Below, one piece after another: positions 11,336-59,228 of a stretch of DNA of 64,000 bases. Within the stretch, counting starts at the first letter, position 1. The number at the start of each line of letters is the position of its first letter. The notes under the pieces are model-generated. The model did no database searches. It was given only the letters and a program-made list of their open reading frames with translations, and was not told where the DNA came from. Where the stretch lies: positions 124,001-188,000 of the IMG/VR virus record IMGVR_UViG_3300027985_000918. One strand, given 5' to 3'. The translations under genes and the position numbers were made by a program.

Positions 11336-11359
11336 GGTGTCCTCCGTCGTCCGCATCGC

Positions 11360-14943: not shown

Positions 14944-14988
14944 AATGGAGCCTCCGCACATGTGGTTGCGGAGGCACTCTACCGGGTC

Positions 14989-25853: not shown

Positions 25854-27683
25854 TCAGGTGAGCCAGTCGAACTCGACCACGTAGCGGATTCGCTGGTAGT
25901 CGGGGGAGAAGATGATGTGCTCATCGTTCTCTAGCCCGTGCCCGTTATCTCCACCGACCCCGAAGACCGAGTCGGACTGGACCTGGGCCCCGCCACACTG
26001 ACAGGTCGTGGCCCCACCCCGGTTACCGTAGGAGCGGTAGGTGCCCTGCATGTTGTTCGGGCGGTGGCACTTGACACAGCTCTGGGGAGGGCTGCTCCAG
26101 GAGCCCGTCGAAGGCGCCCGGTAGGCATGCCCCATGATCATGTCCGTGACGAACATGAAACATCCCCGGTTCTGGACCCCGCCCCCACCCCCGCCGCTGT
26201 AGTAGCCTCGCCCCGTGTAGCCGTAGCTCTTCCGCCAGTCGGTGGCGAAGTAGATACCGTGTCCGAAATTGGCCCCGGTGATCTGGGCTCCCGGCAAGCT
26301 CTGAGGGAGCCGGAAATTAGTCCCCATGATGGGGGCGATGTTGACCGGGCGGGTGCCGTGGATGCTCAGGATGACGTTCGCCTGGGCGTACTCATCGGAG
26401 AGACCCGCCAGGTCGGTCCGGCGAGGTTGGAGATTGCCCCGGAGGGAGAACTTACCCTGGACACGGGCACCAACCCTTTGAACTTCCGCCAGGAAGCGGG
26501 CGTCTCGATCGGGACGTTCCACAGCAAACAGAGAACGGACCTTGGGAGACTTGGATCCCATGTAACCGTGCCGGTTGTTGCTCATGTGGACGAAAGCATC
26601 CCAGAGCCACTTCCCCTCGGTCCCGTTCGGATCGATCCAGCGGAGCTGAGCGTTCAGCAGGGAATCCGGATCGATGGACTGGACCGGAGTTGTCGTCGTG
26701 AAGTCCTCGGTCGTCAGAGCGGTCTCGAAGGCGTCGAGGTCCGCCTGGAGGGACAGGAGGTTGCCTGAGTTCAGGATGGCCTGCTCGTCGGTCCATCCCG
26801 TCCGGGGGATAGGACGGGGAACCAGACTGTTGACCGTGGTCGAGATGGTCCGCAGAGCGGAGTCCTTGACCTGGGCGGCCACCAGGGCATCGTTGTCCCG
26901 GAAGTTGGTGCCCACGGCGGCCAGTCGCTGAAGGGCCGCCGGGATGAGCTGGTCTCGAACCTTCGAGATGGCCCGCATGGTCGGAGTCACACCGCTGGCC
27001 TGGGACAGGGAGCGGGTGTACGTCTGGGTGCCGCCGACGAGGTCCCTGGCGAGTTGGACGACCTCGGGCTGCCACGACTTCAGAGACTTGACCACAGCGG
27101 GGGCGGCCGTCTTGACCGGCGTGGGAGCAGGCATGGCGACCCCGGACCCGTCTTTGACGGTCAGCACGTCGGGGAGCCCCTTCTCACGAGTTGCTAGGTC
27201 CTGGATGAGATAGCCGTCTTTGCCAGCCTTGGCACACCACAGGTCGATGCCCCCGATGCTCTTGCACTCCAGACGGGCCAGGTTCTTGTCTCGGACCTGC
27301 CCAGCGAACCAGGAACGGGCCTGGTCGAGGGTGGCCCCCACGGTGAACTGGAAATCCTGGTAGGCCCCCGTCCAGGAGCCGTGCTCCCAGCTCTTCCCCG
27401 GACGGGAACGACCCCACTCGAAGTAGGCGTGGTACTGGCCCGTCTTCTTGTCCCGCACCACCCCGGCGTGGTAGCCCTTGGCGTTGTTCGCTTCCCCGAA
27501 CTGGTTGACGCACACCATGTCCACGAGCCCGATGTCGGGGTTGGGCATGGAACCGTTCAGGTACCCATTTTCGTCGATGGCGGGCTTTCCGACGTACTCG
27601 AAGTCGTCAGGAGAGCAGCCTGCGGGGAGCTGGCGCTTGCCCAACTTGTCGTTGGTCCCAGGTTTCTTGACGGCGATGGTCAT
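25854..27683 (-). CDS. PARP1-like ADP-ribosyltransferase (WGR + PARP regulatory + catalytic domains)
   Basis: NNAKGY...YFEWGRS (WGR); PEVVQL...NSLVPR (regulatory); IHGTR, FGHGIYFA..RKSYGY, NDEHIIF (H-Y-E triad). Confidence 0.88.
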   Translation of the reverse strand: MTIAVKKPGTNDKLGKRQLPAGCSPDDFEYVGKPAIDENGYLNGSMPNPDIGLVDMVCVNQFGEANNAKGYHAGVVRDKKTGQYHAYFEWGRSRPGKSWEHGSWTGAYQDFQFTVGATLDQARSWFAGQVRDKNLARLECKSIGGIDLWCAKAGKDGYLIQDLATREKGLPDVLTVKDGSGVAMPAPTPVKTAAPAVVKSLKSWQPEVVQLARDLVGGTQTYTRSLSQASGVTPTMRAISKVRDQLIPAALQRLAAVGTNFRDNDALVAAQVKDSALRTISTTVNSLVPRPIPRTGWTDEQAILNSGNLLSLQADLDAFETALTTEDFTTTTPVQSIDPDSLLNAQLRWIDPNGTEGKWLWDAFVHMSNNRHGYMGSKSPKVRSLFAVERPDRDARFLAEVQRVGARVQGKFSLRGNLQPRRTDLAGLSDEYAQANVILSIHGTRPVNIAPIMGTNFRLPQSLPGAQITGANFGHGIYFATDWRKSYGYTGRGYYSGGGGGGVQNRGCFMFVTDMIMGHAYRAPSTGSWSSPPQSCVKCHRPNNMQGTYRSYGNRGGATTCQCGGAQVQSDSVFGVGGDNGHGLENDEHIIFSPDYQRIRYVVEFDWLT

Positions 27684-27742: not shown

Positions 27743-28040
27743 TGATCTTCTCGGGGGACTTCTGGGCCTTGAATAGCTCGAACCGGAGACGGGCACGGGC
27801 GTTCAGAATGGCGATGTTGATGAGGGAGAGGCCGATTCGGGCGTCCGGGTTGTCCATCTCCGCCACCAGCTTTCGGAGGGTGGCCTCGGCCAGGACCGCA
27901 CATTCCTCAGCGGCCTGGAGATCCCCCGCATGGATATAGCGGTCGATCTCCGGGATTCCTACACGGTCTTCCAGGCGACTCTGGGCTTCGGTAGCCTGGG
28001 CAACCAGGATGGCGTCCCGCTCAATGTCCCCACGGGTCAT
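27738..28040 (-). CDS. Hypothetical protein
   Basis: Promoter motif plus conserved leader. Confidence 0.7.
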   Translation of the reverse strand: MTRGDIERDAILVAQATEAQSRLEDRVGIPEIDRYIHAGDLQAAEECAVLAEATLRKLVAEMDNPDARIGLSLINIAILNARARLRFELFKAQKSPEKIR

Positions 28041-28063
28041 GGTGTCCTCCGTTGTTCGTCCCC

Positions 28064-28089: not shown

Positions 28090-28345
28090 CGTTCTGAGAC
28101 CACCCTTGGGTTTCCTCGGAGGCTTCCGCCAGGGCTTCCTCAGCTTTGTCCACGAATTCCGCCCAGGTCTCCTGAGCGTACCCCTCGTAGCCGTCGCCAT
28201 TGTCGTCGAAGTCCTTCGTGAACTCGTCATGGCCCCAGGAGAAGTCCTCGGGGCTGTCACCCTGCTCGGGCACGTACCCATTGAGGTCTTGGAACGGGGT
28301 GAGACGGGAGCCGAACGATCCGAAGTTGCTGATATGCACGCTCAT
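28085..28345 (-). CDS. Small, highly acidic protein (20 D/E vs 3 K/R in 86 aa)
   Basis: Promoter motif plus conserved leader. Confidence 0.7.
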   Translation of the reverse strand: MSVHISNFGSFGSRLTPFQDLNGYVPEQGDSPEDFSWGHDEFTKDFDDNGDGYEGYAQETWAEFVDKAEEALAEASEETQGWSQNG

Positions 28346-28369
28346 GGGGTCCTCCGTTGTTCGCCTCAC

Positions 28370-28395
28370 CTACTTGCCAGGGAACCCGTGTTACC
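28370..28395 (-). promoter_or_regulatory. Phage promoter motif
   Basis: GGTAAC-N14-AAGTAG. Confidence 0.75.
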
Positions 28396-28459: not shown

Positions 28460-28972
28460 TTAGTTCTCGTACTTGGCCTTCAGGGAGGCGAGTTGTTCTC
28501 GCTCCCTCTTCTCCGCAGCTTCCTTCTGGCGGGCATCCTCTTCGGCCTGACGGGCTTCCTCGGCCATCTTCTCGGCTTCCGCCTTGGCCTTGATGTCCGC
28601 CAAAACCTCCGACTGGTCGAGCCAGAGGTAGGAGGTGGGAAACCGGAAGTAGTGCCGGTCGTCCCCGCAACACCCCCGGCCGCAGGCGGGGGCCTCGGCC
28701 TGGATTTCGACCTCGTCGCTGTTGATCTCGATGGTCTTGATATGGGGGCGATATTGGAACAGGTCCTGCCACTCGGGATCGGCGGCGTACCGCTTCCAGA
28801 AATAGCTCTGGGCCAGGTTCTCCATCACGTCCTTGCTCTCCACCAGCAGGTGGATCAGGCTTTCGGATAGGTTGCTTTCGACGTACTTCTGGAGGGTTTG
28901 GTACACCTTGCCGTTGGCGTCCTCCCAGTAGGTGTCACCGTGATCATTCGTCTTCTTGGTCAGCCCTAGCAT
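28460..28972 (-). CDS. Hypothetical protein with C-terminal coiled coil
   Basis: ATGA-coupled start; ACGRGCCG motif. Confidence 0.65.
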   Translation of the reverse strand: MLGLTKKTNDHGDTYWEDANGKVYQTLQKYVESNLSESLIHLLVESKDVMENLAQSYFWKRYAADPEWQDLFQYRPHIKTIEINSDEVEIQAEAPACGRGCCGDDRHYFRFPTSYLWLDQSEVLADIKAKAEAEKMAEEARQAEEDARQKEAAEKREREQLASLKAKYEN

Positions 28973-29277
28973 CACGCAGCCCTCCGATAGCAGTTGGAAG
29001 TCTTCCGCCCCAGGAGGGGCAGTTCCAGCCGGCCAGCGTCCGTGGCGAACGCCGTGGCCTCGTTGTTCAGGTCCGGCTCCCGCCAGAGGATAGTCCTGCC
29101 TTCCTTGGGGAGGCAGGCCATGAGATCGTCCTCGGAAGGAACAGCATACACGATAACCGTTCCTCGATGAGGGCCGTGAGCGTGGCACCACTCATCCATA
29201 GCGTGGATTGCCATCGCAGCACGTCTCCCTTCGGAGAGGTCAGTGCGGGTCACGAAGTAGAGACGGTTGGGAGCCAT
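28972..29277 (-). CDS. Peptidyl-tRNA hydrolase 2 (PTH2)-like protein
   Basis: LYFVTRTDLSEGRRAAMAIHA, VIVYAV.SEDDL, WREPDLNNEATAFA, LPLL. Confidence 0.65.
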   Translation of the reverse strand: MAPNRLYFVTRTDLSEGRRAAMAIHAMDEWCHAHGPHRGTVIVYAVPSEDDLMACLPKEGRTILWREPDLNNEATAFATDAGRLELPLLGRKTSNCYRRAA

Positions 29278-31696: not shown

Positions 31697-34318
31697 CTAC
31701 CAGCCGTCGGAACCACCGAAGCTGCCACCGCCCCCGCCGAAGCTGCTGGAGCTGCCCCAGGAGCTACCCCCGCCGAAGCTGCTGGTGCTGCCCCAGGAGC
31801 TGCCTCCTCCGAAGCTGCTGGTGCTGCTGTGGTACCTGGACCGGCGGCGACGGTCCTCTTCTTCCTGCCGCCGCCGACGGTGCCGGGCCTCCTCCTCCCG
31901 GCGGCGCTCTTCCTCCCGGCGGAGGCGGGCTTGCTCTTCCTCGTACCTCTGCCGGGCGGTGCGAACCAGGCGGTCCCACCCCTTCTCCTGGGAATCGAGG
32001 GACAGCAGGAGAGCAGCGTAGTCCACCAGACCCCGGCCGACGAGGGGTGCCTGGTAGCTGAGGTTGGCAGTTCCCCCGAATTCCCGGATCTTGTGGGCCT
32101 TGCTGGACCGCAGGGACTCCATCTGGCTCAGCTTCTTCTCGAAGGCAGCCTTGCGGCGGTCGAGGGTCTTGCAGTGGGCGCTTGCATCGTTGAAAGAGGC
32201 CTTGGCCTTCTCCCAGGACCGCTGGGCGTCGGAGAACAGCCGGCAGGCGTCCAGGTGCCGGTTGGCGGCCACAGCCTCCTCGGCGGAGGTAAACTCGATG
32301 GAAGCCCCAGACTGGGCGATTTCACCGGCCTCGATGTTCCGGTTGGCTTGGAGCATGTCCGTGTGGACCTGACGGGCGGAAGACACCGCCAAGTTGGCGG
32401 CTCGGAAAGCCAGGGCTGCGTTTTGACGTGCGTCCTCAGCACCCTTGCGAGCAGCGGCGATGCCACGGACGGCGGCCTGAATCTCAGCCACCTGCCCCCG
32501 CACCTTGCGATACAGGGTCTCTACCCTGTCGGCTTGTACCTGAAGGGCCTTGATGTCCTTGCTGGAGGCGGCTGTCTGGAGCATCGCTTGGAAGCGGTCT
32601 TCAGCACTCATGGCGGTGTCGAGGGTGACCTTCGGATCGTTCTTCGGGTCCACCCTGGTGTCGATGTCCTCGTACTGCGTGACCCGGGACTTCTCCACTC
32701 TCTGGATGATCTCGGAGACTTCCTGGATGCGAGCCAGGATGGCGGTCTCCATCTCGGCCAGCTCTTCCAGCCGCTTCAGGTAGGCCAGAGGATCCGCCCA
32801 GCGGACGGAGTTGATCGTCTGGTAGAAGGCGGCATCGGACTCGTCGTCTCCGTAGAGGGGGTGGTCATCCACCCAGGTGTTGGGCATACCAGCCGCCTCG
32901 CACATCTTGAACAGACGATCCATCGTGCGGTGCGGGAAGGCCTTCTCTGCTTCCTGCATCCGTGCCTCGGCGGCCCGCTTAAGAGTGTCCCAGCCCTCCT
33001 TGGCTTTCCGGAACGTATTCGCCTGCTCGGCGGCGAACTTGATTGGGTCCACGGTGATCTTGACGGTTTCCCCGCCGAACAAGTCGGACGAGTTGACTTC
33101 TGCGGTGTCCATCGAGAAAGGCTCGGCAAGGGCGGCCAAGGCATCCCGCAGAGGCTGAACCTTGAAGAAAGTGGCAGTCCTGCCTAGTTCCTCACAGCGG
33201 CGGACGTGCCGTTCCAACCCAAGGATGTTCATGTAGATGGTGTCGATGGAGGAAGTGACCCAGTCGTACAACTTGCGGGTCTCCCCCACTACGTCATCGA
33301 AGGCGACCAAGTCCTCACGGTCTTTGAAATGGAATTCGGTGTACTTGGCCTGAGCATGGGACAGCTTCTCGTCCCACTCCCTGAGTGCCGTCTCCAGGTT
33401 TTCCCGAAGCACGGTGAACAGGACAAAGCGGCGGTAGAGCAGCCGCAACAGGAACCCAAGGACAATTGGAAAAGCCAGGATCGCCAAAGTCAGCAGCAAG
33501 ATTTTGAGGATCAGAGCAAACTGGGCCTGCTGAACGGAGAGCCGCAATGGCTCCATGCTGGTGTTCAGCTCCTGGGTGGCCTGGATAAGGGTGTCGGGGT
33601 CCGTAGAGTCTTTCACCGCCAGGGCCTGCTGGTAGGCGGCCTCGTAGGCCCCCACTCCCGTCGAAGGGTGATGTTGACGGGCGGCCAGCAGGCCTTGGGC
33701 CTTCCCGAGCATCTCCAGATAGTTTGTTTGAGCGGCCCGGAATTTTCGGGCAGCGATCTGCACAGGGTCAATCTGCGGCCAGACCCGGGAGATAGCGGCC
33801 CGGAGGGTGTTGATGATTCCCCCCTTCAAATCCTGGGGGCTCTTCGCCACCTTCGGGATGAAGTATGCCTTCCGGTCAGAACTCTGGGTGGAATGGGGGT
33901 ACACGGCCCCCAACGTCTCCGGCATGGAGAATCCCACCTGGCAGAAATCTTTGCCCGAACGCCGGTAAAACGGCTTTCTGTCGCAGTCCGAGGACCAAGC
34001 CACGGTCAGGATCAGGAACCGCTCGGAGTCCAAACCCTGGCTGGCCCACTTGGTGGCGAACCCGTCCCCGAGGATGTGAGGCTCGATGCGGTAACCGTCC
34101 GAGTTGACCAGCACGACATAGCTGGGGATCGGCAGGGTGCGGGCGAACTCCTCTACGGCTTGGGCCTGGGGGATCCCAAACCCTGTGGGGAAGAACCCCT
34201 CCGGCGAGCTGTAGACGTGAACGCCCTGTTGGAACTCCGGGGTCGCCGGGGCCGCTTGGGCGAGGGGTGTGGCAGCCAATACGGCCAAGGCTAGGAAGCT
34301 CCGGATGAACCGTTTCAT
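31697..34318 (-). CDS. Secreted TPM-like domain + TM helix + long coiled coil + Gly/Ser-rich tail ending GW
   Basis: Signal peptide ALAVLAATPLAQA; TM ALILKILLLTLAILAFPIVLGFLL; tail GGGSSWGSTSSFGG...GGSDGW typical of TPM (DUF477) proteins. Confidence 0.65.
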   Translation of the reverse strand: MKRFIRSFLALAVLAATPLAQAAPATPEFQQGVHVYSSPEGFFPTGFGIPQAQAVEEFARTLPIPSYVVLVNSDGYRIEPHILGDGFATKWASQGLDSERFLILTVAWSSDCDRKPFYRRSGKDFCQVGFSMPETLGAVYPHSTQSSDRKAYFIPKVAKSPQDLKGGIINTLRAAISRVWPQIDPVQIAARKFRAAQTNYLEMLGKAQGLLAARQHHPSTGVGAYEAAYQQALAVKDSTDPDTLIQATQELNTSMEPLRLSVQQAQFALILKILLLTLAILAFPIVLGFLLRLLYRRFVLFTVLRENLETALREWDEKLSHAQAKYTEFHFKDREDLVAFDDVVGETRKLYDWVTSSIDTIYMNILGLERHVRRCEELGRTATFFKVQPLRDALAALAEPFSMDTAEVNSSDLFGGETVKITVDPIKFAAEQANTFRKAKEGWDTLKRAAEARMQEAEKAFPHRTMDRLFKMCEAAGMPNTWVDDHPLYGDDESDAAFYQTINSVRWADPLAYLKRLEELAEMETAILARIQEVSEIIQRVEKSRVTQYEDIDTRVDPKNDPKVTLDTAMSAEDRFQAMLQTAASSKDIKALQVQADRVETLYRKVRGQVAEIQAAVRGIAAARKGAEDARQNAALAFRAANLAVSSARQVHTDMLQANRNIEAGEIAQSGASIEFTSAEEAVAANRHLDACRLFSDAQRSWEKAKASFNDASAHCKTLDRRKAAFEKKLSQMESLRSSKAHKIREFGGTANLSYQAPLVGRGLVDYAALLLSLDSQEKGWDRLVRTARQRYEEEQARLRREEERRREEEARHRRRRQEEEDRRRRSRYHSSTSSFGGGSSWGSTSSFGGGSSWGSSSSFGGGGGSFGGSDGW
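31737..31827. repeat. 36-bp tandem repeat (2.5 copies) encoding GGGSSWGS(T/S)SSF
   Basis: CCGAAGCTGCTGG(A/T)GCTGCCCCAGGAGCT at 31737 and 31773; partial copy at 31809. Confidence 0.85.
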
Positions 34319-34358: not shown

Positions 34359-34385
34359 CTACCCCAAAATAGATGTGCTGTTACC
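34359..34385 (-). promoter_or_regulatory. Phage promoter motif upstream of the TPM gene
   Basis: GGTAAC-N15-GGGTAG. Confidence 0.7.
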
Positions 34386-34402
34386 TACTTGACGGAACGC
34401 AG

Positions 34403-34477
34403 TGCGCCCGGGGGGACTCGAACCCCCGCATCACCAAGTTTTAGAGACTCGGGCTCTAACCTCTGAGCTACGGGCGC
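34403..34477 (-). tRNA. tRNA with anticodon CUA (amber suppressor type); CCA not encoded
   Basis: Acceptor GCGCCCG/CGGGCGC, D stem GCTC/GAGC, anticodon stem CGAGT/ACTTG with loop CT-CTA-AA (anticodon 34444-34442), T stem GGGGG/CCCCC with TTCGAGT, discriminator A. Confidence 0.9.
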
Positions 34478-34515
34478 ATACTGGGGCCTCGTGGCCCCGT
34501 CGTTGTTCGGGGGGA

Positions 34516-34542
34516 CTACTTCGGCACCCTCCTGCTGTTACC
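34516..34542 (-). promoter_or_regulatory. Phage promoter motif upstream of tRNA(CUA)
   Basis: GGTAAC-N15-AAGTAG. Confidence 0.7.
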
Positions 34543-34656: not shown

Positions 34657-35085
34657 TCAGGTGGGCTCTAGGCGGGGGAGTAGCACCACTCCCCCCCAGT
34701 ACCTCTTCATGGTGCGGAGGGCCGCCTCAGACAGAGGTTTCGCCACGTAGCTGTTCGCTCCCCCCTGATACCCTCGAAGGATGTCCGTATCGGACTTGCT
34801 GGCCGTCATGACGACCACGGGGATATGGCTCAACAGAGGGTCCTTGCGGATCTGGGCAAGAGCCTCATGTCCCCCCATCCTTGGCATCTTCAAATCCAGT
34901 AGGATCATGTCGGGCAGGGTTTTAGAGGGGTCCCTCAGCCTCTCCAGCAATTCCACTCCATCCTTGACCCTCTCCAGCTTGTTCGGACTCTGGCACTCGT
35001 CGAAGCTGTCAGCTATGAGCATCCAGTCTTCATCGTCATCTTCGGCAAAAAGAAGCAGCGGGTTGCGTTTTGAAGCTGTGAGCAT
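34657..35085 (-). CDS. Single-domain response regulator (Rcp1-like)
   Basis: FAEDD, PDMILLDLKMP, VVMTAS, GANSYVAKP. Confidence 0.9.
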   Translation of the reverse strand: MLTASKRNPLLLFAEDDDEDWMLIADSFDECQSPNKLERVKDGVELLERLRDPSKTLPDMILLDLKMPRMGGHEALAQIRKDPLLSHIPVVVMTASKSDTDILRGYQGGANSYVAKPLSEAALRTMKRYWGGVVLLPRLEPT

Positions 35086-35089
35086 GGGA

Positions 35090-36253
35090 TCAATCCACCT
35101 TTCTCTTTGGGAGGCCAACGTGGAACGTGGCCCCTTCTCCGGGCATAGCCTCGCAGTCGATCCAGCCTTGGTGACGATCTAGAATCTTCTTCACCAGTGC
35201 CAGACCGATGCCCGTGCCCGGATAGTCAAACCGGGTGTGAAGCCTCTCGAAGAGCTGGAACACCTTGTCTTTGAATGCCATGTCGAACCCGATCCCGTTG
35301 TCCGACACTGAAATCACCCAGTCCTCGTCGGTCTCCTGGGCGGTGAACTGGATCAAGGGCACCCTGTCGGGGTGCCGGAACTTGATGCTGTTGCTGATCA
35401 GGTTCTGAAGCACGGTCCGCATCTGGTAGCGGTCTGCCCAGACGGTAGGTAGGTCCTGTGCCAAAACCCGGGCATTGGCCTGTTCGATGGGGATGGCCAG
35501 GTCTTCCAGAATGCTGCGGAGGATCTTGTTGAGGTCCACTGCCTCAAAGGGGTCTTCCAGCCTCCCCACCCGGCTGTAGGACAGGAGGTCATCCATCAAC
35601 GACTGCATGCGCTCCGTGGCGTTCAACATCACGTCGATATATGACTGCCCCTTGTCGTCCAGCACTTCGGCGTACTTCTCCTTGAGCCTTTGGCCGAAGG
35701 CCCTCACTTTGAGCAGGGGTTCTCGGAGGTCATGGCTGGCAGCGTAAGCGAACTGACGTAGCTCATCGTTGGACAGTTGAAGCTCTTCCGTCCGGGCCCT
35801 CACTAGAGCTTCCAAATCCTGGACATTCCCTCGATGCTCCGTCACATCCCGTACCAGGACTAGGCACTCGTCCTCATGACTGCGGGCGAACCGAGCCTCG
35901 AACACGGAATTAGGATGATTGGGGACCTTGAACTCCCAGGTGATTACCTCTCCAGTGTCCATCGCTTGGAGGGCTTTATGCAGGGTGGCGTTTGCGAATT
36001 CCGGCCTGCCTACATCGAGAACCCGCCGGCCGATAACGTTCTGGTGATCCGCCAAGGGGGAGGCATTCAGCCCCGGCGCCATGTCGGCATAGAACCCTTC
36101 TCGGGTGATGATGCAGATCAGGTCGGGAGAGGCAATGCGGAGGGCATCCAGACGACCGGGATCATTGACTCGGCCGTAAGAGGGATCCTGCTGGCACCGA
36201 TTCAGAAACGGACAGCTCTTGCCCTGCAGGCACCAGTCGGGAGAACTGGACAT
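35090..36253 (-). CDS. PAS-domain sensor histidine kinase (Cph1/BphP-type transmitter)
   Basis: FAYAASHDLREPL (H box), QNLISNSIKF (N), SDNGIGF (G1), FQLFERLH (F), GTGIGLA (G2). Confidence 0.92.
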   Translation of the reverse strand: MSSSPDWCLQGKSCPFLNRCQQDPSYGRVNDPGRLDALRIASPDLICIITREGFYADMAPGLNASPLADHQNVIGRRVLDVGRPEFANATLHKALQAMDTGEVITWEFKVPNHPNSVFEARFARSHEDECLVLVRDVTEHRGNVQDLEALVRARTEELQLSNDELRQFAYAASHDLREPLLKVRAFGQRLKEKYAEVLDDKGQSYIDVMLNATERMQSLMDDLLSYSRVGRLEDPFEAVDLNKILRSILEDLAIPIEQANARVLAQDLPTVWADRYQMRTVLQNLISNSIKFRHPDRVPLIQFTAQETDEDWVISVSDNGIGFDMAFKDKVFQLFERLHTRFDYPGTGIGLALVKKILDRHQGWIDCEAMPGEGATFHVGLPKRKVD

Positions 36254-36257
36254 GCCC

Positions 36258-37013
36258 TCACCCTACACTCTTGAGCGCCCGGATGGCTTCGACATCCACC
36301 ACCTGGACCAGGAGGGTTAGAAGAACCACGATGGTGATCAAACCCAGGAACAACATAACCGAAGCGACAGGGTGCAATGTGACCCATTCGGCCGTGTCCC
36401 GGACCCTATCCCAAGGGGTCTTCTTGATATTCTTGAGGATCTCTTCCTTTTGCTGGTCCAGCTTGACATCCAAGCGGCCGAACCCCTCTTTGAACTCGGA
36501 CCTCAGCTCACTTAGCTGAAAGGCAGTGCTGGTCTGAGCGGACGCACCCTCTCGGGTAAGGGATACTAGCTCCTGAACCTGGAGACCCACCCCTCCTGAT
36601 TCCGAGCCGTTTCGGATCTGCCTCTCATGTAGCCCGATGGCGTACAGGCAGGTCCGCTCCAGGAGGTCAGACGAGAAAGTCCCCTTCTCCAAGAATTCCG
36701 CCACCCCCGCCTCCAGAGCTTCATCCTGGAGACGGCGGTCCCCGTGGCTGGTGATAAGCACCACGGGGATGTGAAAATGCAGTCGCACCATCTCGGACAG
36801 CAGATCCATTCCGGACTGGTCGGGGAGACGATAGTCAAGGAGCATCACGTCGTAGCGGTGCTTCTTGACCTTCTCCAGGGCGGCGGCGGCGGTTTCGACG
36901 GCATCCACGCCAAACTTGGCCCGCTTGGAGTCATCGAGCAGGTCGATGACCAGCCGGGCGTCGTCCCGGTCGTCCTCAACCAACAGCACTCGAACAGTTG
37001 CGGGCGGGGGCAT
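36258..37013 (-). CDS. Receiver (REC) domain fused to coiled coil and C-terminal TM anchor
   Basis: LLVEDD, LLDYRLP, LITS, FLEKG; C-terminal VASVMLFLGLITIVVLLTLLVQV. Confidence 0.85.
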   Translation of the reverse strand: MPPPATVRVLLVEDDRDDARLVIDLLDDSKRAKFGVDAVETAAAALEKVKKHRYDVMLLDYRLPDQSGMDLLSEMVRLHFHIPVVLITSHGDRRLQDEALEAGVAEFLEKGTFSSDLLERTCLYAIGLHERQIRNGSESGGVGLQVQELVSLTREGASAQTSTAFQLSELRSEFKEGFGRLDVKLDQQKEEILKNIKKTPWDRVRDTAEWVTLHPVASVMLFLGLITIVVLLTLLVQVVDVEAIRALKSVG

Positions 37014-37160
37014 GTCTCGAACCTCCAAAAACAGCAGGACCCTCCTAAGTTGGGGCCGCTACCACGTATGGATTATCGAGCATCTACCATTCTCGGGGCC
37101 GACTTCACGATAGTGGTCCCTAGTCCCCCATCTTCTGGCCAGTGTTGTGATCCCTCACAG

Positions 37161-39550: not shown

Positions 39551-39574
39551 TTGATGAGAACAACGGAGGCCACC

Positions 39575-39823
39575 ATGAACACGGAAACCACCCGTGGTGG
39601 CCTCCACCAGCCTGGCGTAGGAGTTCGATTACTTATGGCTTCCAAGTGGCCCCTTCAGATCAAAGTCGGCAAGACCCGGTTCAAGATCATGCACCCGGAA
39701 CAGGGTCGGCACCAGATCATCAACACCAAGACAGGTGAGGTGGTGGGACATCTGGTAGAGCACCAGGTGCCGTTCAACGGACTCAAGGTCGCAGCCCGGG
39801 AAGTCATCGAGCAGGTCGCATGA
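39575..39823 (+). CDS. Hypothetical protein
   Basis: Promoter motif plus conserved leader. Confidence 0.65.
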   Translation: MNTETTRGGLHQPGVGVRLLMASKWPLQIKVGKTRFKIMHPEQGRHQIINTKTGEVVGHLVEHQVPFNGLKVAAREVIEQVA

Positions 39824-40287
39824 TGGGCATCGAGATCGAACGCAAATATCTCGTTGCCGACGACGGCTGGAAGCAGGAGCACGTCATCTCCCACCAGTCC
39901 ATTCGCCAGGGGTTCCTGTCCACGGACCCACTGCGGGTGGTCCGGGTGAGAGTTACCGAAGACCAGGGGTTCTTGACCGTCAAAGGGGCGGGCCATCTGT
40001 CCCGCCCCGAATACGAGTACGAGATCCCCACTGAGGATGCTGAAGCTCTCCTTCTGCTCTGCAAAGGGAAGATCATCCAGAAGACCCGCTGGACGCTGGT
40101 TTTCTCCGGCCGACACTGGGAGGTGGACGTATTCGAGGGCCAGCACGCAGGACTGGTCCTGGCTGAGACCGAAATGAAGGTCGAGAACGAGATCTTCAAG
40201 GTCCCTTCCTGGGCGGATCTGGATGTTACGATGTACCCCAGATACAAGAACATGAACCTCGCCTTGGAAGGGGAAGACATCCCATGA
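39820..40287 (+). CDS. CYTH / triphosphate tunnel metalloenzyme
   Basis: EIERKYLV, IRQGFL, VRVRV, LTVKG, EYEYEIP, KTR, WEVDVF, LAETE. Confidence 0.9.
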   Translation: MMGIEIERKYLVADDGWKQEHVISHQSIRQGFLSTDPLRVVRVRVTEDQGFLTVKGAGHLSRPEYEYEIPTEDAEALLLLCKGKIIQKTRWTLVFSGRHWEVDVFEGQHAGLVLAETEMKVENEIFKVPSWADLDVTMYPRYKNMNLALEGEDIP

Positions 40288-41096
40288 GCTTGACCATCAT
40301 CTCTCTCGGTCATGGAGGGGGCGTTCCTGTCTTCCCCTACGGGACCGCCGGCAACACCAACTTCGCTCTGGTCCCTGGGCGGCACGAAGGACCCGTGGTG
40401 GGCATCCTCCGGTCCAACCCCTACTGGCTCATCGACTGCGGGCCGGAAACCTTGATGAGGATCGCAGGGACGGGACAGATCCCGGAACCCATGGTTCAGA
40501 ACCTCCAGGGGGTCATTGTCACTCACTGCCATGGGGATCATTCTGGGGGGCTCTACGGTCTGGCTTGGAGGACTCACTTCATCGAAGAGAGGAAGGTCAA
40601 CCTGGTCTACCGGGAAGAGCTGATCCCGTTTTTGGAGGATCAGCTCATCGAGATCCAGTACCTGTCCGGAGACACCCCTCGGGTGCCCTGGACCTACTAC
40701 TGGGAGACCGTCGCCTGTTCTCCCACCCGGATATGGATGGACCTAGGGGATTTCAAGATCTGCTTTTTCAAGGTGGACCACAACATCCCCGGTTTTCCCA
40801 GCTTCGGAGTCGAGGTGCAGACCGTAGAGGGGGGCAGAGCTGTCTTCAGTGGAGACAGCGCCCACCCCATCGACGCCCACCGCTTCAGTGGTGCCGACGT
40901 GGTGTTCCACGATGTGCAGTTCTACACGAGCGACCCGAGGGTAGCCGTACACTGCCCATACGAGGCCCTGGAAACCGCTGTGAGCCCCGAGTTGCGGAAA
41001 AAGGTACACCTGGCCCATACCGGCCAGAAGCCGCCGGGGGCGGCCTTAGAGGCGTTCTCCTGGGCTTCTCTTGATACGATCGTAGTGGTGGATTAG
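40284..41096 (+). CDS. MBL-fold metallohydrolase resembling Apyc1 cyclic-nucleotide phosphodiesterases
   Basis: LIDCG, THCHGDHSGG, VDH, FSGDS, VFHDVQF, VHCPYEAL, VHLAHTG. Confidence 0.8.
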   Translation: MSLTIISLGHGGGVPVFPYGTAGNTNFALVPGRHEGPVVGILRSNPYWLIDCGPETLMRIAGTGQIPEPMVQNLQGVIVTHCHGDHSGGLYGLAWRTHFIEERKVNLVYREELIPFLEDQLIEIQYLSGDTPRVPWTYYWETVACSPTRIWMDLGDFKICFFKVDHNIPGFPSFGVEVQTVEGGRAVFSGDSAHPIDAHRFSGADVVFHDVQFYTSDPRVAVHCPYEALETAVSPELRKKVHLAHTGQKPPGAALEAFSWASLDTIVVVD

Positions 41097-44721: not shown

Positions 44722-45627
44722 TTATGCGCCGAACAACTCTCCGATGAGGTCTTCTTCGCCCACTCCCGTCCACTTGGACGGGAACTTGGAGATCAGGGCT
44801 TCCCCCAGGTTCTTGAGGTAGTCGTAGCCGTAATCCCCATTCTCGGCACATCGGGAGAGGGTGTCGGGGATGTCATTCTCGATCTCCGAGCAGAAGAACA
44901 CGGCGGGGGCGGCAATAGCCGCAGAAGTGTCCACGTCCCCTGTGAGAGACACGATGTGCTTGAGAATAGCCGAGGCACTGTCGTAGCGTTGGATCGCCCC
45001 AATGGCCGCACGAACGTGCTGAAAGCCTTTCTCCTGAATGGGAGTAACCCAGCCATCTGCCCAACCCCATCCTGGAATCAGCTCTTCGATGTACGCTCCC
45101 GCATCCGCCTTGGGGCCGATGTGGTGGTATGTGTAGTGGGTGAGCAAAGCCGAGGCGGCAGCGGCCTCCAGCCCCGCCCTGGTGGCGTGCGTGAGACACC
45201 CCTGGAGGTAAGCGGCGTCAATGACTCCCTGCTCTTCCTTGAGCAATCCCAGGACCGGAGCCCGCATAGCGGCCCCCGACTTGTCACTGTAGGGACGGAT
45301 GCCCTTCAGAAACTCGGCCGGAGTTTGGACTCTCGCCAGAAAGTCGTAGAACGCCCCGGCGTATCCCTTGCGGGGGTCCCGTCGGAATGTGCTCAAAAAA
45401 GACTGGGCGATGTCACCCAAGCTCCAGGTGGACGGGAGTGGCTGCCGAAGCATCAACTCGGCCAACGCTACCTGCATCTGGGTGTCGTCCGAATATGTCC
45501 CGGGCTTCGTCTTCCACTTGGGGTGGCTCTGGAAGGTCCGAAGGTTGTTCCTCTTGGCGACGAATTTGGGGTCGGCATACTCGAAGCCGAAACCGTATCC
45601 GTCAAAAATCGCCGTATAGTGGAGCAC
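44722..45627 (-). CDS. ADP-ribosylglycohydrolase (ARH/DraG family)
   Basis: AIFDGYGFGFEY, YSDDTQM, SGAAMR, LTH, GDVDT. Confidence 0.88.
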   Translation of the reverse strand: MLHYTAIFDGYGFGFEYADPKFVAKRNNLRTFQSHPKWKTKPGTYSDDTQMQVALAELMLRQPLPSTWSLGDIAQSFLSTFRRDPRKGYAGAFYDFLARVQTPAEFLKGIRPYSDKSGAAMRAPVLGLLKEEQGVIDAAYLQGCLTHATRAGLEAAAASALLTHYTYHHIGPKADAGAYIEELIPGWGWADGWVTPIQEKGFQHVRAAIGAIQRYDSASAILKHIVSLTGDVDTSAAIAAPAVFFCSEIENDIPDTLSRCAENGDYGYDYLKNLGEALISKFPSKWTGVGEEDLIGELFGA

Positions 45628-47739: not shown

Positions 47740-48210
47740 TCATGGAAAGGGGGACTTGTGGGATGTCCGGAAGTGGCGAGACCACAGCTCCCGGACAACT
47801 TCTGGGGGAGCATCCGTGGCGAGGCCCTGAGGCGAACAGCCCCTCCCACCCCCGTACCCGTACACATGGTACTTGCCCCAACGACCGAGGAACACACTTG
47901 CGTCCCACCAGAAATCCCAGAGGGGAGTCCCCTCAGAGTTCAGCTCCCCCGTGTCATAGTAGCAGAGTTCCACTCCACTCTTCCCCAACTCCCGAAACGG
48001 CTCAGGGGTGTCACCCCAGGAATCGGGATCGATATACACAGCCCCCTCATCCTGCATGAGCTGCCAATCTCCGGGCCAGCAGTCGTTGCCGGAGGCGGAC
48101 TTGGCGACTGCAGGGGCCATCCTGGTGAGCTGCCCCAGCAACTCACCCACCCGGGCTTCGGCCCTCTGACGGGTGGTGCGGGGTTCAGTTCCGAAAGTGA
48201 ACGTCTTCAT
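47740..48210 (-). CDS. Hypothetical protein
   Basis: ATGA-coupled to upstream gene. Confidence 0.6.
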   Translation of the reverse strand: MKTFTFGTEPRTTRQRAEARVGELLGQLTRMAPAVAKSASGNDCWPGDWQLMQDEGAVYIDPDSWGDTPEPFRELGKSGVELCYYDTGELNSEGTPLWDFWWDASVFLGRWGKYHVYGYGGGRGCSPQGLATDAPPEVVRELWSRHFRTSHKSPFP

Positions 48211-49442
48211 ACGTCGTCGCCGGTCGCTTTGCCGTAGTAGGCGGGCAAACTGGGCATAGCCTCGTAGAGGCATGACCGTAGGTAGGGGTACCCGAGATCG
48301 TCCCAAATGCGGAAATACGGGATAACATTCCCGAACTTCTCCCTTTCGTTGAGGATCTGGATACGTCTGATCTTCTCATCCTCTGGTAGGTGTTGCTCGT
48401 CGAAGCGAGCCTGGGTGTTGGGGTCCACACCTCTTTTTGCCAAGAGTTTGCTTTGGTCTGAGTTTCGCACTACGATCACGTTGCCGTTGACCAAAGAGGC
48501 CATGTCATTCTCGACCAGGAGAGCCCACTCCAGGATGATGACCCCCGCCTTGTCCGCCAACCACTCCCGCATTTTCCGGAGGACGTGAGGCTTGGTCCTC
48601 GTGTGGATCTGCTTGAGCATGTCCGGGGTGATCTCCCCGCTAGAGATCTTGGCCTTGAGCACAGCCGTGTTGACATTGTCTCCAAGGGGCATCAACACAT
48701 CCTTGCCCACGAGGTCAGCGATATCGTCCCGGACCTTCTGAGCGCCTGGCGTGTCCTCCTCGTATAGGTCACGGATGCACTTATCGAGGTTCAGGTGGTG
48801 GGCGGGGATGCCGTCGAGCCTGAGCCTCTTCTCCAGCTCCTTCGCCACCCAGGTCTTGCCTGTCGCCACCCGACCGCAGATACCAACCATGAATTGGCGA
48901 TGCAGTTTGACCTCCAAGCGATGCTTCACTCGGAGTGGCACTAGATGACCGATATCGACGTGCCGCTGGGCCATAGCCTTGACCAAACTGGAGCTGACGT
49001 GAGCCCAGTCAGGATCCGGGTGGACGAACACCACCATGTCCTTGATGCCGGGCATGATCCGGTCGTGGTGGCCCATCTGAGACTCCTCGTAAGCACGGTC
49101 ACGAGCGTCCCTCACCCCCCGAAAAATCACGTCGATCCCCTCCCGGAGGACGACGTCCACCAGAAGGTCGTTGGACCCGATGACCCGCCATCTCCCCCGA
49201 CAATCACCCGGAAGGAAAGTCGAGAGAGCATGGGTGACATGAAGCATCCTCTCGTTCATCTCTAGGAGGTACTTGCCCGCCTTATCGTCGTTGTTTCCGA
49301 CCCAGACCACCAGCTCGTCGATGACGGGTGCCCCCGGATCGTACTTCCCGAGGCACTTCCGAATGATGTGCAGGTGCCCCCGGGTCACGGGGTCTCCCGA
49401 CAAAGCGAACAATCCACGCACGGAGAACCTCCTTTCGTCCAT
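48207..49442 (-). CDS. Bifunctional phosphopantetheine adenylyltransferase / dephospho-CoA kinase (CoaD-CoaE fusion)
   Basis: SGDPVTRGH, IFRGVR..D..YE, HVSSSLVK (CoaD); VGICGRVATGKT, LDKCIR, EWALLVE (CoaE). Confidence 0.8.
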   Translation of the reverse strand: MDERRFSVRGLFALSGDPVTRGHLHIIRKCLGKYDPGAPVIDELVVWVGNNDDKAGKYLLEMNERMLHVTHALSTFLPGDCRGRWRVIGSNDLLVDVVLREGIDVIFRGVRDARDRAYEESQMGHHDRIMPGIKDMVVFVHPDPDWAHVSSSLVKAMAQRHVDIGHLVPLRVKHRLEVKLHRQFMVGICGRVATGKTWVAKELEKRLRLDGIPAHHLNLDKCIRDLYEEDTPGAQKVRDDIADLVGKDVLMPLGDNVNTAVLKAKISSGEITPDMLKQIHTRTKPHVLRKMREWLADKAGVIILEWALLVENDMASLVNGNVIVVRNSDQSKLLAKRGVDPNTQARFDEQHLPEDEKIRRIQILNEREKFGNVIPYFRIWDDLGYPYLRSCLYEAMPSLPAYYGKATGDDV

Positions 49443-53478: not shown

Positions 53479-53513
53479 TCGGCCTCCCTTGGGGGGGTGT
53501 ACGTTCTCAGGCA

Positions 53514-53540
53514 CTACCCTTTTTGGGCCGAGATGTTACC
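53514..53540 (-). promoter_or_regulatory. Phage promoter motif
   Basis: GGTAAC-N15-GGGTAG. Confidence 0.7.
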
Positions 53541-53562
53541 GGGGGGCCTCCCCCGCTCCTAC

Positions 53563-54051
53563 CTACACACGCTTGTTGCCATGACGGTAAGGGCGCTGGA
53601 GATTGAAGGCGTGCTTCTGGGCCATGATGGACTGCATGTCGATACCAACTCGGCCGCAGTAGTCCAGGATACGGATGACCACGTCGGCCAACTCGGTGGG
53701 GACTCCCTCGGGTTTGTCGGGCTTGCTTTCGTTGAAATAGGTCTCGGTGACATCGTGGCCGTTTCGCCACTCTTCGTAGGCCTCACTCACTTCAGAGGTG
53801 AACAGGGCGCAGAAGTCCCCGAATGTGCGGTCATCCCGGTCCCACCAACCCTTGTCCTGGGCATACTGGTGGATGACCCCCTGCCAGTCCCGGATGGTCT
53901 GGGGGTCTTGCAGCCCCACCTGCTTTTCGAGATCTCCGTACTCCTTTTCGATGGAGTCGAGAAGGCCCAGGGCGGCCCCCCGGATGTCCCCGGAATCCAC
54001 ACCGATAGCCACAGCCCGCTTGAGGCTACGAGCGGCATCCAAATCGATCAT
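53563..54051 (-). CDS. MazG-like nucleotide pyrophosphohydrolase
   Basis: KGWW, SEVSEAYE, ELADVVIRILD, K.AFN..RPYRHG. Confidence 0.88.
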   Translation of the reverse strand: MIDLDAARSLKRAVAIGVDSGDIRGAALGLLDSIEKEYGDLEKQVGLQDPQTIRDWQGVIHQYAQDKGWWDRDDRTFGDFCALFTSEVSEAYEEWRNGHDVTETYFNESKPDKPEGVPTELADVVIRILDYCGRVGIDMQSIMAQKHAFNLQRPYRHGNKRV

Positions 54052-55178: not shown

Positions 55179-55211
55179 AAGGGTCCCACCCTGAGCAAGG
55201 GGATAGGAGGA

Positions 55212-59205: not shown

Positions 59206-59228
59206 GTGGGCGAACAACGGAGGACCCC

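What the first reader, a model, noticed from the sequence alone, without database searches (positions are those of the whole stretch)
34403..34542. Amber-suppressor tRNA (anticodon CUA) with its own promoter in a genome that still stops at TAG
Seen: a canonical cloverleaf whose only well-paired anticodon register gives loop C-U-[CUA]-A-A. A copy of the phage promoter motif lies about 40 nt upstream. I counted 17 genes here that end in TAG, including convergent CTAG overlaps, and found no gene broken by internal TAGs, so this window is not wholesale recoded. The body is not tRNA-Pyl-like (normal D loop GG and TTCGA). It resembles tRNA-Arg(UCU) scaffolds (GCGCCC.TAGCTCAG...TAGAGC) but lacks the Arg identity elements A20 and C35, and it has an odd 6-7 nt variable region, so the charged amino acid is unknown. 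Known: CUA tRNAs occur in TAG-recoded phages. Inference: here it may drive partial, timed readthrough rather than a full code change.
Basis: partly seen in the sequence, partly recalled or inferred. Interest (0 to 1): 0.85.

Follow-up and report, generated by a model that had tools for sequence, protein, structure and literature searches.

The report
Orphan amber-suppressor tRNA in jumbo phage
A 402-kb, GC-rich phage that uses the standard genetic code and ends about a fifth of its genes in TAG still carries a well-formed tRNA, with its own promoter, that should read TAG as an amino acid; a few such unexplained cases are already known, so it is a real oddity but not a new kind of thing.

Summary
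A canonical 75-nt tRNA with anticodon CUA lies at 34403-34477 on the minus strand (ARAGORN; Rfam 60.8 bits). A copy of a phage promoter motif (GGTAAC-N14-17-RGTAG) ends 38 nt upstream of it. That motif occurs 22 times in the window, always between genes and always facing the next gene, against 0.4 expected by chance.

The window belongs to a 402,383-bp metagenomic jumbo-phage contig. In the 162.7 kb (40%) I could fetch, code 11 gives 174 genes at 89% coding density. Stops are TGA 101, TAG 37 and TAA 36. Reading TAG as sense gains nothing, and no gene is interrupted by TAG, including lysis, virion and 2,000-aa genes.

So this is an orphan amber suppressor in a standard-code, 60% GC phage where TAG is not depleted.

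The Arg-scaffold idea is not supported. The D-arm is the type found in bacterial tRNA-Ile2(CAU). The odd 7-nt variable loop matches other viral CUA tRNAs from low-GC, TAG-poor contigs, which suggests horizontal acquisition. The amino acid is unresolved; Gln or Lys is most likely.

A cultured precedent exists: Stenotrophomonas phage Summit (58.5% GC, purpose unknown). Timed readthrough remains untested.

The parts
34403..34477 (-). tRNA gene, anticodon CUA (amber suppressor type). Acceptor stem 7 bp, G1:C72, discriminator A73. D-loop AGAGGUUA with G18 G19. T-loop UUCGAGU. Anticodon loop CUCUAAA. Variable region 7 nt (6 nt if C26:G44 pairs). No encoded CCA.
   Evidence: ARAGORN; Rfam tRNA 60.8 bits; cloverleaf minimum-energy fold; helices covary across 17 viral CUA tRNAs, 97% of cells paired and 16 of 21 pairs with compensatory changes
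34516..34542 (-). Promoter-like motif GGTAAC-N16-AGTAG dedicated to the tRNA. It ends 38 nt upstream of tRNA position 1.
   Evidence: Motif scan: 22 copies in the window, all intergenic and correctly oriented, 0.4 expected. The phage tRNA-Ser(GCU) has the same arrangement, with the motif ending 34 nt upstream.
34478..34515 (-). Predicted 5' leader of the tRNA precursor. It contains GAACAACGA, the box that precedes the ribosome-binding site in this phage's mRNA leaders, and a G+C-rich hairpin (34482-34499). RNase P would have to remove it.
   Evidence: Sequence; hairpin in the fold and in the terminator-like scan, where it is reported on the opposite strand. Processing is inferred.
34359..34385 (-). 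Second copy of the promoter motif, just downstream of the tRNA, serving the 873-aa gene. It shares the 10-mer GGTAACAGCA with the tRNA's promoter.
   Evidence: No terminator-like site lies between the tRNA and this promoter.
31697..34318 (-). Downstream neighbour: an 873-aa protein with no family match. It ends in TAG, and a 335-codon non-coding-like in-frame extension follows.
   Evidence: Its homologue in a related phage (45% identity) has the promoter motif upstream but no tRNA.
34657..35085 (-). Upstream neighbour: response-regulator receiver protein, the last gene of a histidine-kinase/response-regulator cluster. It ends in TGA.
   Evidence: Pfam Response_reg; gene table

Best explanation
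This is a genuine, independently transcribed elongator tRNA with anticodon CUA, carried by a 402-kb, 60% GC jumbo phage that otherwise uses the standard code.

It was probably acquired horizontally from the pool of phage amber-suppressor tRNAs, because it shares an atypical enlarged variable loop with CUA tRNAs of unrelated, TAG-poor phages. It was then placed behind a copy of the phage's own early/middle-type promoter.

Likely mechanism (all steps inferred):
- The precursor is trimmed by host RNase P and given CCA by the host.
- It is charged by a host synthetase that keys on U35, giving Gln or Lys.
- It competes with release factor 1 at UAG.
- The result is partial readthrough of UAG on phage and host messages, not decoding of a recoded gene set.

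Shown: the gene, its fold, the promoter motif, standard-code usage, and abundant TAG stops. Inferred: expression, charging, the identity of the amino acid, and any benefit.
For: tRNA quality:
- establish the gene and its fold.
- All canonical tertiary positions can be read directly from the sequence: U8, A14, G15/C48, G18 G19, U33, A37, U54-A58, G53:C61.
- The A36-A37-A38 loop is the one used by tRNAs that read U-starting codons.

Own promoter.

Standard code:
- Window: 75 complete genes, 90% coding density, stops TGA 41, TAA 18, TAG 16.
- 162.7 kb sampled: 174 genes, stops TGA 101, TAG 37, TAA 36. Coding density is 0.886 in code 11 and 0.877 with TAG read as sense.
- In-frame stops with coding sequence on both sides are no more common for TAG (4) than for TAA (3) or TGA (3). 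Three of the four TAG cases are gene-gene junctions with a ribosome-binding site and a start codon; the fourth (record 192875) lies antisense to the DNA polymerase gene and is most likely an artefact.
- ORFs of 2114 and 1969 aa and of 1264 and 1235 aa, a holin-like gene, an amidase and a virion protein are all uninterrupted.

Family link:
- The 7-nt variable loop GUGAUGC matches GUCAUGC in L040/L053, and 6-nt relatives occur in five other viral CUA tRNAs.
- Those contigs are 29-50% GC with rare TAG stops.

Lineage-specific:
- A related phage with 75% identical PARP and the same promoter motif has no tRNA at the syntenic site.
- No other contig in IMG/VR, the metagenome set or 185,579 genomes carries this tRNA's 5' half or anticodon arm.

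Charging: PMC1483225 reports that E. coli amber suppressors without their own anticodon-independent identity are charged mainly with Gln or Lys through U35. It lists A73 as a Lys element, and G73, U1-A72 and G2-C71 as Gln elements. This tRNA has A73, G1:C72 and C2:G71.
Against: - No expression, processing, aminoacylation or readthrough data exist.
- 60% of the genome was not seen.
- Efficient suppression should be costly here. 21% of genes stop at TAG. Their in-frame extensions are not short (median 29 codons, against 12-23 for TAA and TGA). The gene immediately downstream would gain 335 junk codons. There is therefore no sign that the genome has adapted to readthrough.
- The host is unknown, so E. 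coli identity rules may not apply.
- The family link rests on a short variable loop plus a D-arm that my search pattern itself required.
Confidence: 0.55

Rival explanations
1. Block-wise recoding: the tRNA serves a set of late genes with in-frame TAG that lie in the roughly 240 kb of the genome I could not fetch, as in crAss-like, Lak and other code-15 phages.
For: Known recoded phages confine in-frame TAG to structural and lysis genes and keep replication genes in the standard code (10.1101/2021.08.26.457843). Capsid, portal, terminase and sheath genes were not seen in my 40% sample. The tRNA resembles CUA tRNAs from contigs that look partly TAG-recoded.
Against: The lysis-type and virion-type genes that were sampled carry no in-frame TAG: holin-like, amidase, phrog_1645 virion protein, baseplate-like, and five ORFs of 1235-2114 aa. 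TAG is a frequent true stop (21%) in genes driven by the same promoter class as the tRNA. Described recoded phages and their relatives are TAG-depleted and low in GC.
Confidence: 0.15
2. Passenger or relic: the tRNA is a recently acquired or leftover gene with little or no effect, being poorly charged or outcompeted by RF1. It is neither selected for nor yet purged.
For: It is absent from the syntenic site of the closest relative found. It is unique in the collections searched. The genome shows no adaptation to suppression. Phage Summit's equivalent tRNA also has no identifiable target (PMC9022506).
Against: The structure is flawless. A complete promoter motif sits at the same distance as for a sense tRNA of the same phage. 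A harmful or useless gene would be expected to decay or lose its promoter.
Confidence: 0.2
3. Non-translational role: a tRNA-shaped decoy or substrate, for example for a host anticodon nuclease or a tRNA-modifying enzyme, or a primer or integration-site remnant.
For: The phage encodes a polynucleotide kinase-phosphatase-type protein and a ligase near the window, which are parts of RNA-repair toolkits in other phages. The D-arm is of the Ile2(CAU) type.
Against: Nothing specific points this way. The anticodon loop is the one best suited to decoding UAG. No integrase or att-like repeat is nearby.
Confidence: 0.05
4. Artefact: the CUA anticodon is an assembly or sequencing error in a sense tRNA.
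For: It comes from a single population. The two IMG/VR contigs have the same length and may share reads.
Against: The sequence is identical in both entries. No single-base change yields an anticodon that fits the scaffold's closest relatives, since CAU is two changes away. The variable loop links it to other CUA tRNAs.
Confidence: 0.02

Closest known systems
Suppressor tRNA(CUA) of TAG-recoded (code 15) phages: crAss-like, Lak and other clades (10.1101/2021.08.26.457843; PMC9523058)
   Same: A phage-encoded, canonical class I tRNA with anticodon CUA and loop CUCUAAA. The enlarged 6-7 nt variable loop and the D-arm are shared with CUA tRNAs on other viral contigs, some of which look TAG-recoded.
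   Different: Here there are no in-frame TAG codons in 40% of the genome. TAG is 21% of stops rather than depleted. GC is 60% rather than low. No RF2 or synthetase gene was seen in the sampled part.
Orphan amber-suppressor tRNA of Stenotrophomonas phage Summit (MZ326862; PMC9022506)
   Same: A standard-code, high-GC (58.5%) phage with a predicted CUA tRNA, 12 TAG-terminated genes, no identifiable target gene and no synthetase. Its authors state that the purpose is unknown.
   Different: Summit is a 96-kb siphophage and not a relative. Its tRNA is 71 nt with a 4-5 nt variable loop and a different D-arm. No dedicated promoter was described for it.
Classical bacterial and T4 nonsense suppressors (supE, supF, su7; T4 psu)
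   Same: Anticodon CUA in an otherwise normal tRNA, competing with RF1. The loop CUCUAAA is identical to the supF and su7 loops (from my own knowledge).
   Different: Those are single-base mutants of sense tRNAs selected in the laboratory. This one is a wild-type gene with its own promoter, and no one-step sense parent was identified.
Bacterial tRNA-Ile2 (anticodon CAU, lysidine-modified)
   Same: Identical 19-nt D-arm. C4:G69, C5:G68, U12:A23 and A73 are all present. It is up to 59/75 identical to Fimbriimonadaceae CAU tRNAs.
   Different: The anticodon differs at two positions, there is a 2-nt insertion in the variable loop, and base pair 2:71 is different. With U35 and A36 it lacks the main isoleucine determinants (PMC9976931).

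Membership tests
Canonical elongator tRNA (Rfam RF00005) | Cloverleaf with 7/4/5/5-bp stems, conserved D- and T-loop residues, and a score above the family threshold | tested here: met
   60.8 bits against a gathering score of 29, full-length match; ARAGORN; the minimum-energy fold is the cloverleaf
Amber-suppressor tRNA (by anticodon) | Anticodon CUA at positions 34-36 in a 7-nt loop with U33 and a purine at 37 | tested here: met
   Loop C-U-CUA-A-A in the ARAGORN, Rfam and thermodynamic registers
Amber-suppressor tRNA (by function) | Is aminoacylated and inserts an amino acid at UAG in vivo | not testable with these tools
   Needs a reporter assay with mass spectrometry, or tRNA sequencing
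Phage code-15 recoding system | Genes with in-frame TAG that give full-length proteins only when TAG is read as sense, and a coding-density gain in code 15 | tested here: not met
   Coding density is 0.886 in code 11 and 0.877 with TAG as sense over 162.7 kb. There is no excess of coding-flanked TAG. The one candidate antisense ORF was rejected. 60% of the genome is untested.
Phage code-15 recoding system | TAG depleted or absent as a true stop; low GC | tested here: not met
   TAG is 37 of 174 stops (21%) and GC is about 60%
Phage code-15 recoding system | Accessory code-change genes (RF2, a synthetase) in some members | tested here: inconclusive
   None appear among the precomputed Pfam hits of the gene tables covering the sampled 40%. 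The rest was not seen, and these genes are optional in the family.
tRNA-Pyl | 3-nt variable loop, small D-loop without G18 G19, no T54-Psi55-C56, one base between the acceptor and D stems, and pylS/pylBCD genes | tested here: not met
   6-7 nt variable loop, D-loop AGAGGUUA with GG, T-loop UUCGAGU, U8 and A9 both present. No Pyl genes appear in the gene tables. Only the possible 6-bp anticodon stem resembles Pyl. ARAGORN's 'Pyl' label is its default name for any CUA anticodon.
   U20 and U35. The phage's own tRNA-Arg(CCU) has a different D-loop and a 5-nt variable loop. The D-arm matches CAU/Ile tRNAs in 119 of 120 bacterial hits.
tRNA-Ile2(CAU)-type scaffold | D-arm GUAGCUCAG-R/U-GGUUAGAGC, C4:G69, C5:G68, A73, 5-nt variable loop, anticodon CAU | tested here: inconclusive
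   D-arm, C4:G69, C5:G68 and A73 are met. The variable loop (7 nt) and the anticodon are not. Overall identity is at most 79%, and the hit set was selected on the D-arm.

The most novel reading that the evidence does not exclude
The phage deliberately runs an ambiguous UAG during infection. A suppressor tRNA under an early/middle promoter partly overrides termination at the 21% of phage genes, and at all host genes, that end in TAG. This would serve as host takeover, as a way to make C-terminally extended or fused isoforms (four in-frame gene pairs across TAG exist in the window), or as the first 'ambiguous intermediate' step towards recoding. The lineage is GC-rich and TAG-rich, which contradicts the published route of low GC, then TAG depletion, then suppressor acquisition.
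Probability: 0.2. Interest if true: 0.75.

Novelty: new member of a known kind. Interest (0 to 1): 0.5.

Why it matters
Published models of phage stop-codon recoding start from low GC and loss of TAG stops; the suppressor tRNA arrives afterwards. This phage, like phage Summit, holds a flawless CUA tRNA with its own promoter while still using TAG as a common stop in a 60% GC genome.

If the tRNA is active, the phage tolerates or exploits genome-wide ambiguous termination. That would be a natural test case for how codes begin to change and for what suppression does to an infected cell.

If it is inactive, it shows that suppressor tRNAs move between phages faster than they are put to use.

Practically, it warns annotators that a CUA tRNA alone does not mean code 15.

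Tried and rejected
- **In-frame TAG fusions.** Four gene pairs are in frame across a TAG (stop codons at 14989, 9716, 29278 and 55212, minus strand). Each downstream gene has its own GGAGG site and start codon. No Pfam domain spans a junction. The frequency (4 of 9 co-directional, non-overlapping cases) is near the one-third expected.
- **A possible recoded gene.** A 495-codon minus-strand ORF with four TAGs at record 52289-53776 is the antisense shadow of a real plus-strand gene. Its translation is junk, and CTA codons at 4.3 per 1000 explain the TAGs.
- **Isotype by BLAST.** Results are ambiguous: Lys, Trp and Arg among phage tRNAs, Val in E. coli, all at most 79%.
- **The same tRNA elsewhere.**
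  - The exact anticodon arm in IMG/VR returned only this contig plus one chance hit.
  - The exact 5' 25 nt in 185,579 genomes returned nothing.
  - The D-arm plus CUCUAAA in the metagenome set returned four unrelated low-GC contigs, and did not return this contig itself.
- **Relatives of the phage.** Searches via the 873-aa neighbour and via PARP found one close relative (no tRNA at the syntenic site, only 14 kb seen) and one distant 230-kb relative (seven tRNAs, none CUA).
- **Fetching the whole contig.**
  - Walking with exact-protein look-ups reached 40% of the genome. One look-up returned no DNA.
- **Host identification.** RuvB from the contig carrying a bacterial homologue was uninformative. 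The best tRNA-body matches, to Fimbriimonadaceae, are only a weak hint.
- **Lysidine idea.** If C34 were modified, the tRNA would read UAA. I set this aside because near-identical loops occur in phages whose dominant stop is TAA.
- **No GenBank phage is close** at the DNA or protein level.

Full report
**1. The observation**

ARAGORN finds exactly one tRNA in the 64-kb window, at 34402-34477 on the minus strand, with anticodon CUA. Rfam's tRNA model matches 34477-34403 end to end at 60.8 bits, against a gathering score of 29.

The 75-nt RNA folds by energy alone into a cloverleaf (-35.5 kcal/mol, z = -3.2). Its parts are:
- a 7-bp acceptor stem with G1:C72;
- U8 and A9;
- a 4-bp D stem with loop AGAGGUUA;
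- an anticodon stem of 5 bp, or 6 bp if C26:G44 pairs;
- anticodon loop C-U-CUA-A-A;
- a 7-nt (or 6-nt) variable region;
- a GGGGG/CCCCC T stem with loop UUCGAGU;
- discriminator A73.

CCA is not encoded. All the usual tertiary-contact residues can be read directly in the sequence.

ARAGORN's 'tRNA-Pyl' label is only its default name for any CUA anticodon. The D-loop, T-loop, variable loop and the 8-9 linker are all unlike tRNA-Pyl.

**2. The promoter**

Upstream of the tRNA, on its own strand, lies GGTAAC-N16-AGTAG (34516-34542), ending 38 nt before position 1. A scan for GGTAAC-N14-17-GTAG gives 22 sites in the window. Every one is intergenic and points at the next gene. Shuffles give 0.4 sites.

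The sampled genome holds 41 sites in 162.7 kb. They concentrate around DNA-metabolism genes and are sparse around the giant ORFs at record 213-239 kb.

Many sites are followed by a conserved leader, GAACAACGGAGG...ATG. The tRNA's own leader keeps GAACAACGA but replaces the ribosome-binding site with a G+C-rich hairpin.

The phage's tRNA-Ser(GCU) has the same motif, ending 34 nt upstream. The arrangement is therefore how this phage drives stand-alone tRNA genes.

A second motif copy (34359-34385) directly after the tRNA serves the next gene. It shares the 10-mer GGTAACAGCA with the tRNA's promoter, which hints at a local duplication when the tRNA was installed.

No sigma-70-type promoter is predicted on either strand, and no terminator-like site on the tRNA's own strand.

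**3. What the genome is**

An exact-protein look-up places the window in JGI contig Ga0259481_10000009, which is IMGVR_UViG_3300027985_000918 and is 402,383 bp long. Record coordinate = window coordinate + 124,000. An identical-length contig exists in sample 3300028422, and there are Logan assemblies of SRR7216773.

Gene content is that of a jumbo phage:
- NAD-dependent ligase, two PARP-like proteins, RNase H, thymidine and thymidylate kinases;
- DNA polymerase A with an intein;
- a phrog_1645 virion protein and a baseplate-like protein;
- a holin-like protein;
- ORFs of 1,235-2,114 aa.

No GenBank phage is close.

**4. Is TAG recoded?**

I built a codon-usage gene caller trained on the window's long ORFs. 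In the window it gives 75 complete genes plus one truncated at the window edge, at 90% coding density. Stops are TGA 41, TAA 18 and TAG 16. The CTAG and TTAG convergent overlaps are there.

By pattern scans and contig walking I assembled 162.7 kb, or 40.4% of the genome. The record ranges are 3.3-10.7, 25.7-31.6, 48.8-60.3, 61.3-64.5, 87.9-196.3 and 212.8-239.1 kb.

| Reading | Genes | Coding density | Stops |
|---|---|---|---|
| Code 11 | 174 | 0.886 | TGA 101, TAG 37, TAA 36 |
| TAG as sense | 154 | 0.877 (lower total score) | TGA 110, TAA 44 |
| TGA as sense | 116 | 0.740 | TAG 68, TAA 48 |

(All.)

In-frame stops with coding-like sequence on both sides number 4 for TAG, 3 for TAA and 3 for TGA. 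Three of the four TAG cases have a GGAGG site plus a start codon for the downstream gene. The fourth, at record 192875, lies antisense to the DNA polymerase gene and is probably an artefact.

One apparent 495-codon ORF with four TAGs is the antisense shadow of a real gene.

Genes of the classes that recoded phages typically recode are all uninterrupted: holin-like, amidase, virion and baseplate proteins, and the giant ORFs.

TAG-terminated genes are not followed by nearby backup stops. Their median in-frame extension is 29 codons, against 12-23 for the other stops (p = 0.046). The 873-aa gene just downstream of the tRNA would run on for 335 codons.

So the genome is standard-code wherever I could look, and it shows no adaptation to suppression.

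**5. Where the tRNA comes from**

BLAST against annotated phage and E. coli tRNAs is uninformative. Lys, Trp, Arg and Val all score 73-79%.

More specific probes tell more:
- The exact 5' 25 nt occur in none of 185,579 bacterial and archaeal species genomes.
- The 19-nt D-arm, followed by any anticodon in a CU-NNN-AA loop, gave 120 rows before the limit. Anticodons were CAU 110, UAU 5, GAU 4 and UCC 1. This is an Ile2(CAU)/Ile-type D-arm. The best overall identity is 59/75, to Fimbriimonadaceae CAU tRNAs that share the T stem, C4:G69, C5:G68 and A73.
- CAU is two substitutions from CUA, so this is not a one-step mutant of such a tRNA.

In IMG/VR, the pattern 'same D-arm type + CUCUAAA' finds 16 further viral contigs. 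Six are 183-517 kb.

After alignment, the window's odd variable loop GUGAUGC lines up with GUCAUGC in L040 and L053, and with 6-nt versions in L038, L039, L041, L044 and L048. My search pattern did not constrain this feature.

Across 17 viral CUA tRNAs, including Summit's, the four helices covary strongly. 97% of cells are paired, 16 of 21 pairs carry compensatory changes, and 0 of 500 shuffles match.

Those other contigs are 29-50% GC. Their genes rarely stop at TAG, and several gain coverage when TAG is read as sense. That is the published profile of recoded phages and their relatives.

The window's phage is the outlier that carries the same kind of tRNA in a TAG-rich, GC-rich genome.

Its closest relative found has PARP 75% identical and the same promoter motif. 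That relative has the promoter directly upstream of the homologue of the 873-aa gene, with no tRNA. A distant 230-kb relative has seven tRNAs nearby, none CUA.

Together this favours horizontal acquisition and local installation behind a duplicated promoter. It does not favour inheritance or a recent point mutation.

**6. Which amino acid?**

This is unresolved. The tRNA lacks:
- the anticodon-independent identities (G3:U70 for Ala, a long arm for Ser, Leu or bacterial Tyr, G-1 for His);
- the Arg elements A20 and C35;
- the Ile anticodon elements.

In E. coli, amber suppressors without such identities are charged mostly with Gln or Lys through U35. Suppressors built from tRNA-Ile1 and tRNA-Ile2 took Gln and Lys respectively. 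Lys elements include A73. Gln elements include U1-A72, G2-C71, G3-C70, G10, U38 and G73 (PMC1483225).

This tRNA has A73, G1:C72, C2:G71, G3:C70, G10 and A38, which leans towards Lys by E. coli rules. Every phage TAG reassignment described so far is to Gln. Near-identical family members differ at position 73, so the discriminator may not matter in the real hosts.

The host is unknown.

**7. Mechanism and alternatives**

The best reading is a functional amber suppressor made from an early/middle-type promoter, charged by a host enzyme, and competing with RF1 to give partial UAG readthrough. My confidence is 0.55.

The main rivals are:
- TAG-containing late genes in the unsampled 60% (0.15);
- a passenger or relic with little activity (0.20);
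- a non-translational tRNA-like role (0.05);
- an assembly or sequencing artefact (0.02).

**8. Comparison with what is known**

Suppressor tRNAs are a hallmark of code-15 and code-4 phages. One standard-code close relative of recoded phages carrying a suppressor has been reported, within a model that starts from low GC and stop-codon depletion (10.1101/2021.08.26.457843; jumbo-phage survey PMC13037316).

The nearest precedent for this exact puzzle is Stenotrophomonas phage Summit. It has 58.5% GC, the standard code, 12 TAG-ending genes and a predicted amber suppressor. [quoted passage not shown] Its tRNA is not closely related to this one.

I therefore file this as a new member of a known, unexplained kind. 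The added points of interest are the jumbo genome, a dedicated phage promoter, a clear link to the suppressor family of TAG-poor phages, and clear non-depletion of TAG.

**9. Verdict**

Interest is 0.5: a real and testable oddity that runs against the current recoding model, but with precedent, no functional data, an unknown host, and 60% of the genome unseen.

Noticed in passing
window, 22 sites, e.g. 2366-2391(-), 11474-11499(+), 28370-28395(-), 59180-59205(+): A phage-wide promoter-like motif, GGTAAC-N14-17-RGTAG. It is always intergenic and always faces the next gene (0.4 sites expected by chance; 41 sites in 162.7 kb). The AAC-containing upstream box with 15-16 nt spacing looks more like an ECF-type sigma promoter than a sigma-70 one. 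The motif is also present in a related phage (L169, 8 sites in 14 kb). The sigma factor that reads it was not identified.
   Followed up: partly
window 28343-28362(-), 28038-28057(-), 11333-11352(-), 39558-39577(+), 59212-59231(+): A near-identical 5' leader, GRACRACGGAGGMCMCCATG (ribosome-binding site plus start codon), is reused by five genes. The tRNA's leader keeps the first part of it (GAACAACGA).
   Followed up: partly
window 34657-37058(-): The phage encodes a two-component-like cluster directly upstream of the tRNA: a PAS/HisKA/HATPase histidine kinase (35090-36253) flanked by two response-regulator receiver proteins.
   Followed up: no
window 25854-27683(-), 44722-45627(-), 7374-9425(-), 48207-49442(-); L010:16994-17914: An NAD/ADP-ribose toolkit: two PARP-like proteins (609 aa and 306 aa), an ADP-ribosylglycohydrolase-like protein, an NAD-dependent DNA ligase, and a cytidylyltransferase-like/CoaE-like fusion.
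   Followed up: no
window 39820-41096(+): Adjacent genes for a CYTH-domain protein and a metallo-beta-lactamase-fold protein that hits the anti-Pycsar Apyc1 family (precomputed Pfam). These are candidate counter-defence genes against cyclic-nucleotide signalling.
   Followed up: no
window 13963-14988, 9485-9715, 28972-29277, 54678-55211 (all minus strand): Four genes lie in frame immediately after a TAG-terminated upstream gene. If the suppressor is active, fusion proteins would result, for example a 306-aa protein joined to an amidase_2-domain protein. Each downstream gene has its own ribosome-binding site and start codon, so these are probably ordinary neighbours.
   Followed up: yes
L038-L053, L292-L295 (viral and metagenome contigs): A set of CUA-anticodon tRNAs on unrelated viral contigs (29-50% GC, six of them 183-517 kb). 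They share an Ile2-type D-arm, and many share an enlarged 6-7 nt variable loop. On several contigs they sit at the edge of large tRNA arrays, and on three of those next to a tmRNA.
   Followed up: partly
window 31731-31838 and 56505-56593: In-gene tandem repeats: three 36-nt units at the 3' end of the 873-aa gene, and four 18-nt units inside the gene at 56343-56771.
   Followed up: no
L007:16602-20255 (record about 192.7-196.3 kb): The family-A DNA polymerase gene is interrupted by an intein with a LAGLIDADG endonuclease domain (precomputed Pfam).
   Followed up: no
L417 and L300 (record about 88-107 kb): A long run of same-strand genes with no family match and recurring product lengths (270, 270, 270; 201, 201; 178, 178; 155, 155). 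This suggests an expanded paralogous gene family.
   Followed up: no
L171:3698-6521: The only distant homologue of the 873-aa neighbour (30% identity) lies on a bacterial-looking 59% GC contig, directly downstream of a tRNA-Gly(GCC). That tRNA is unrelated to the suppressor.
   Followed up: partly
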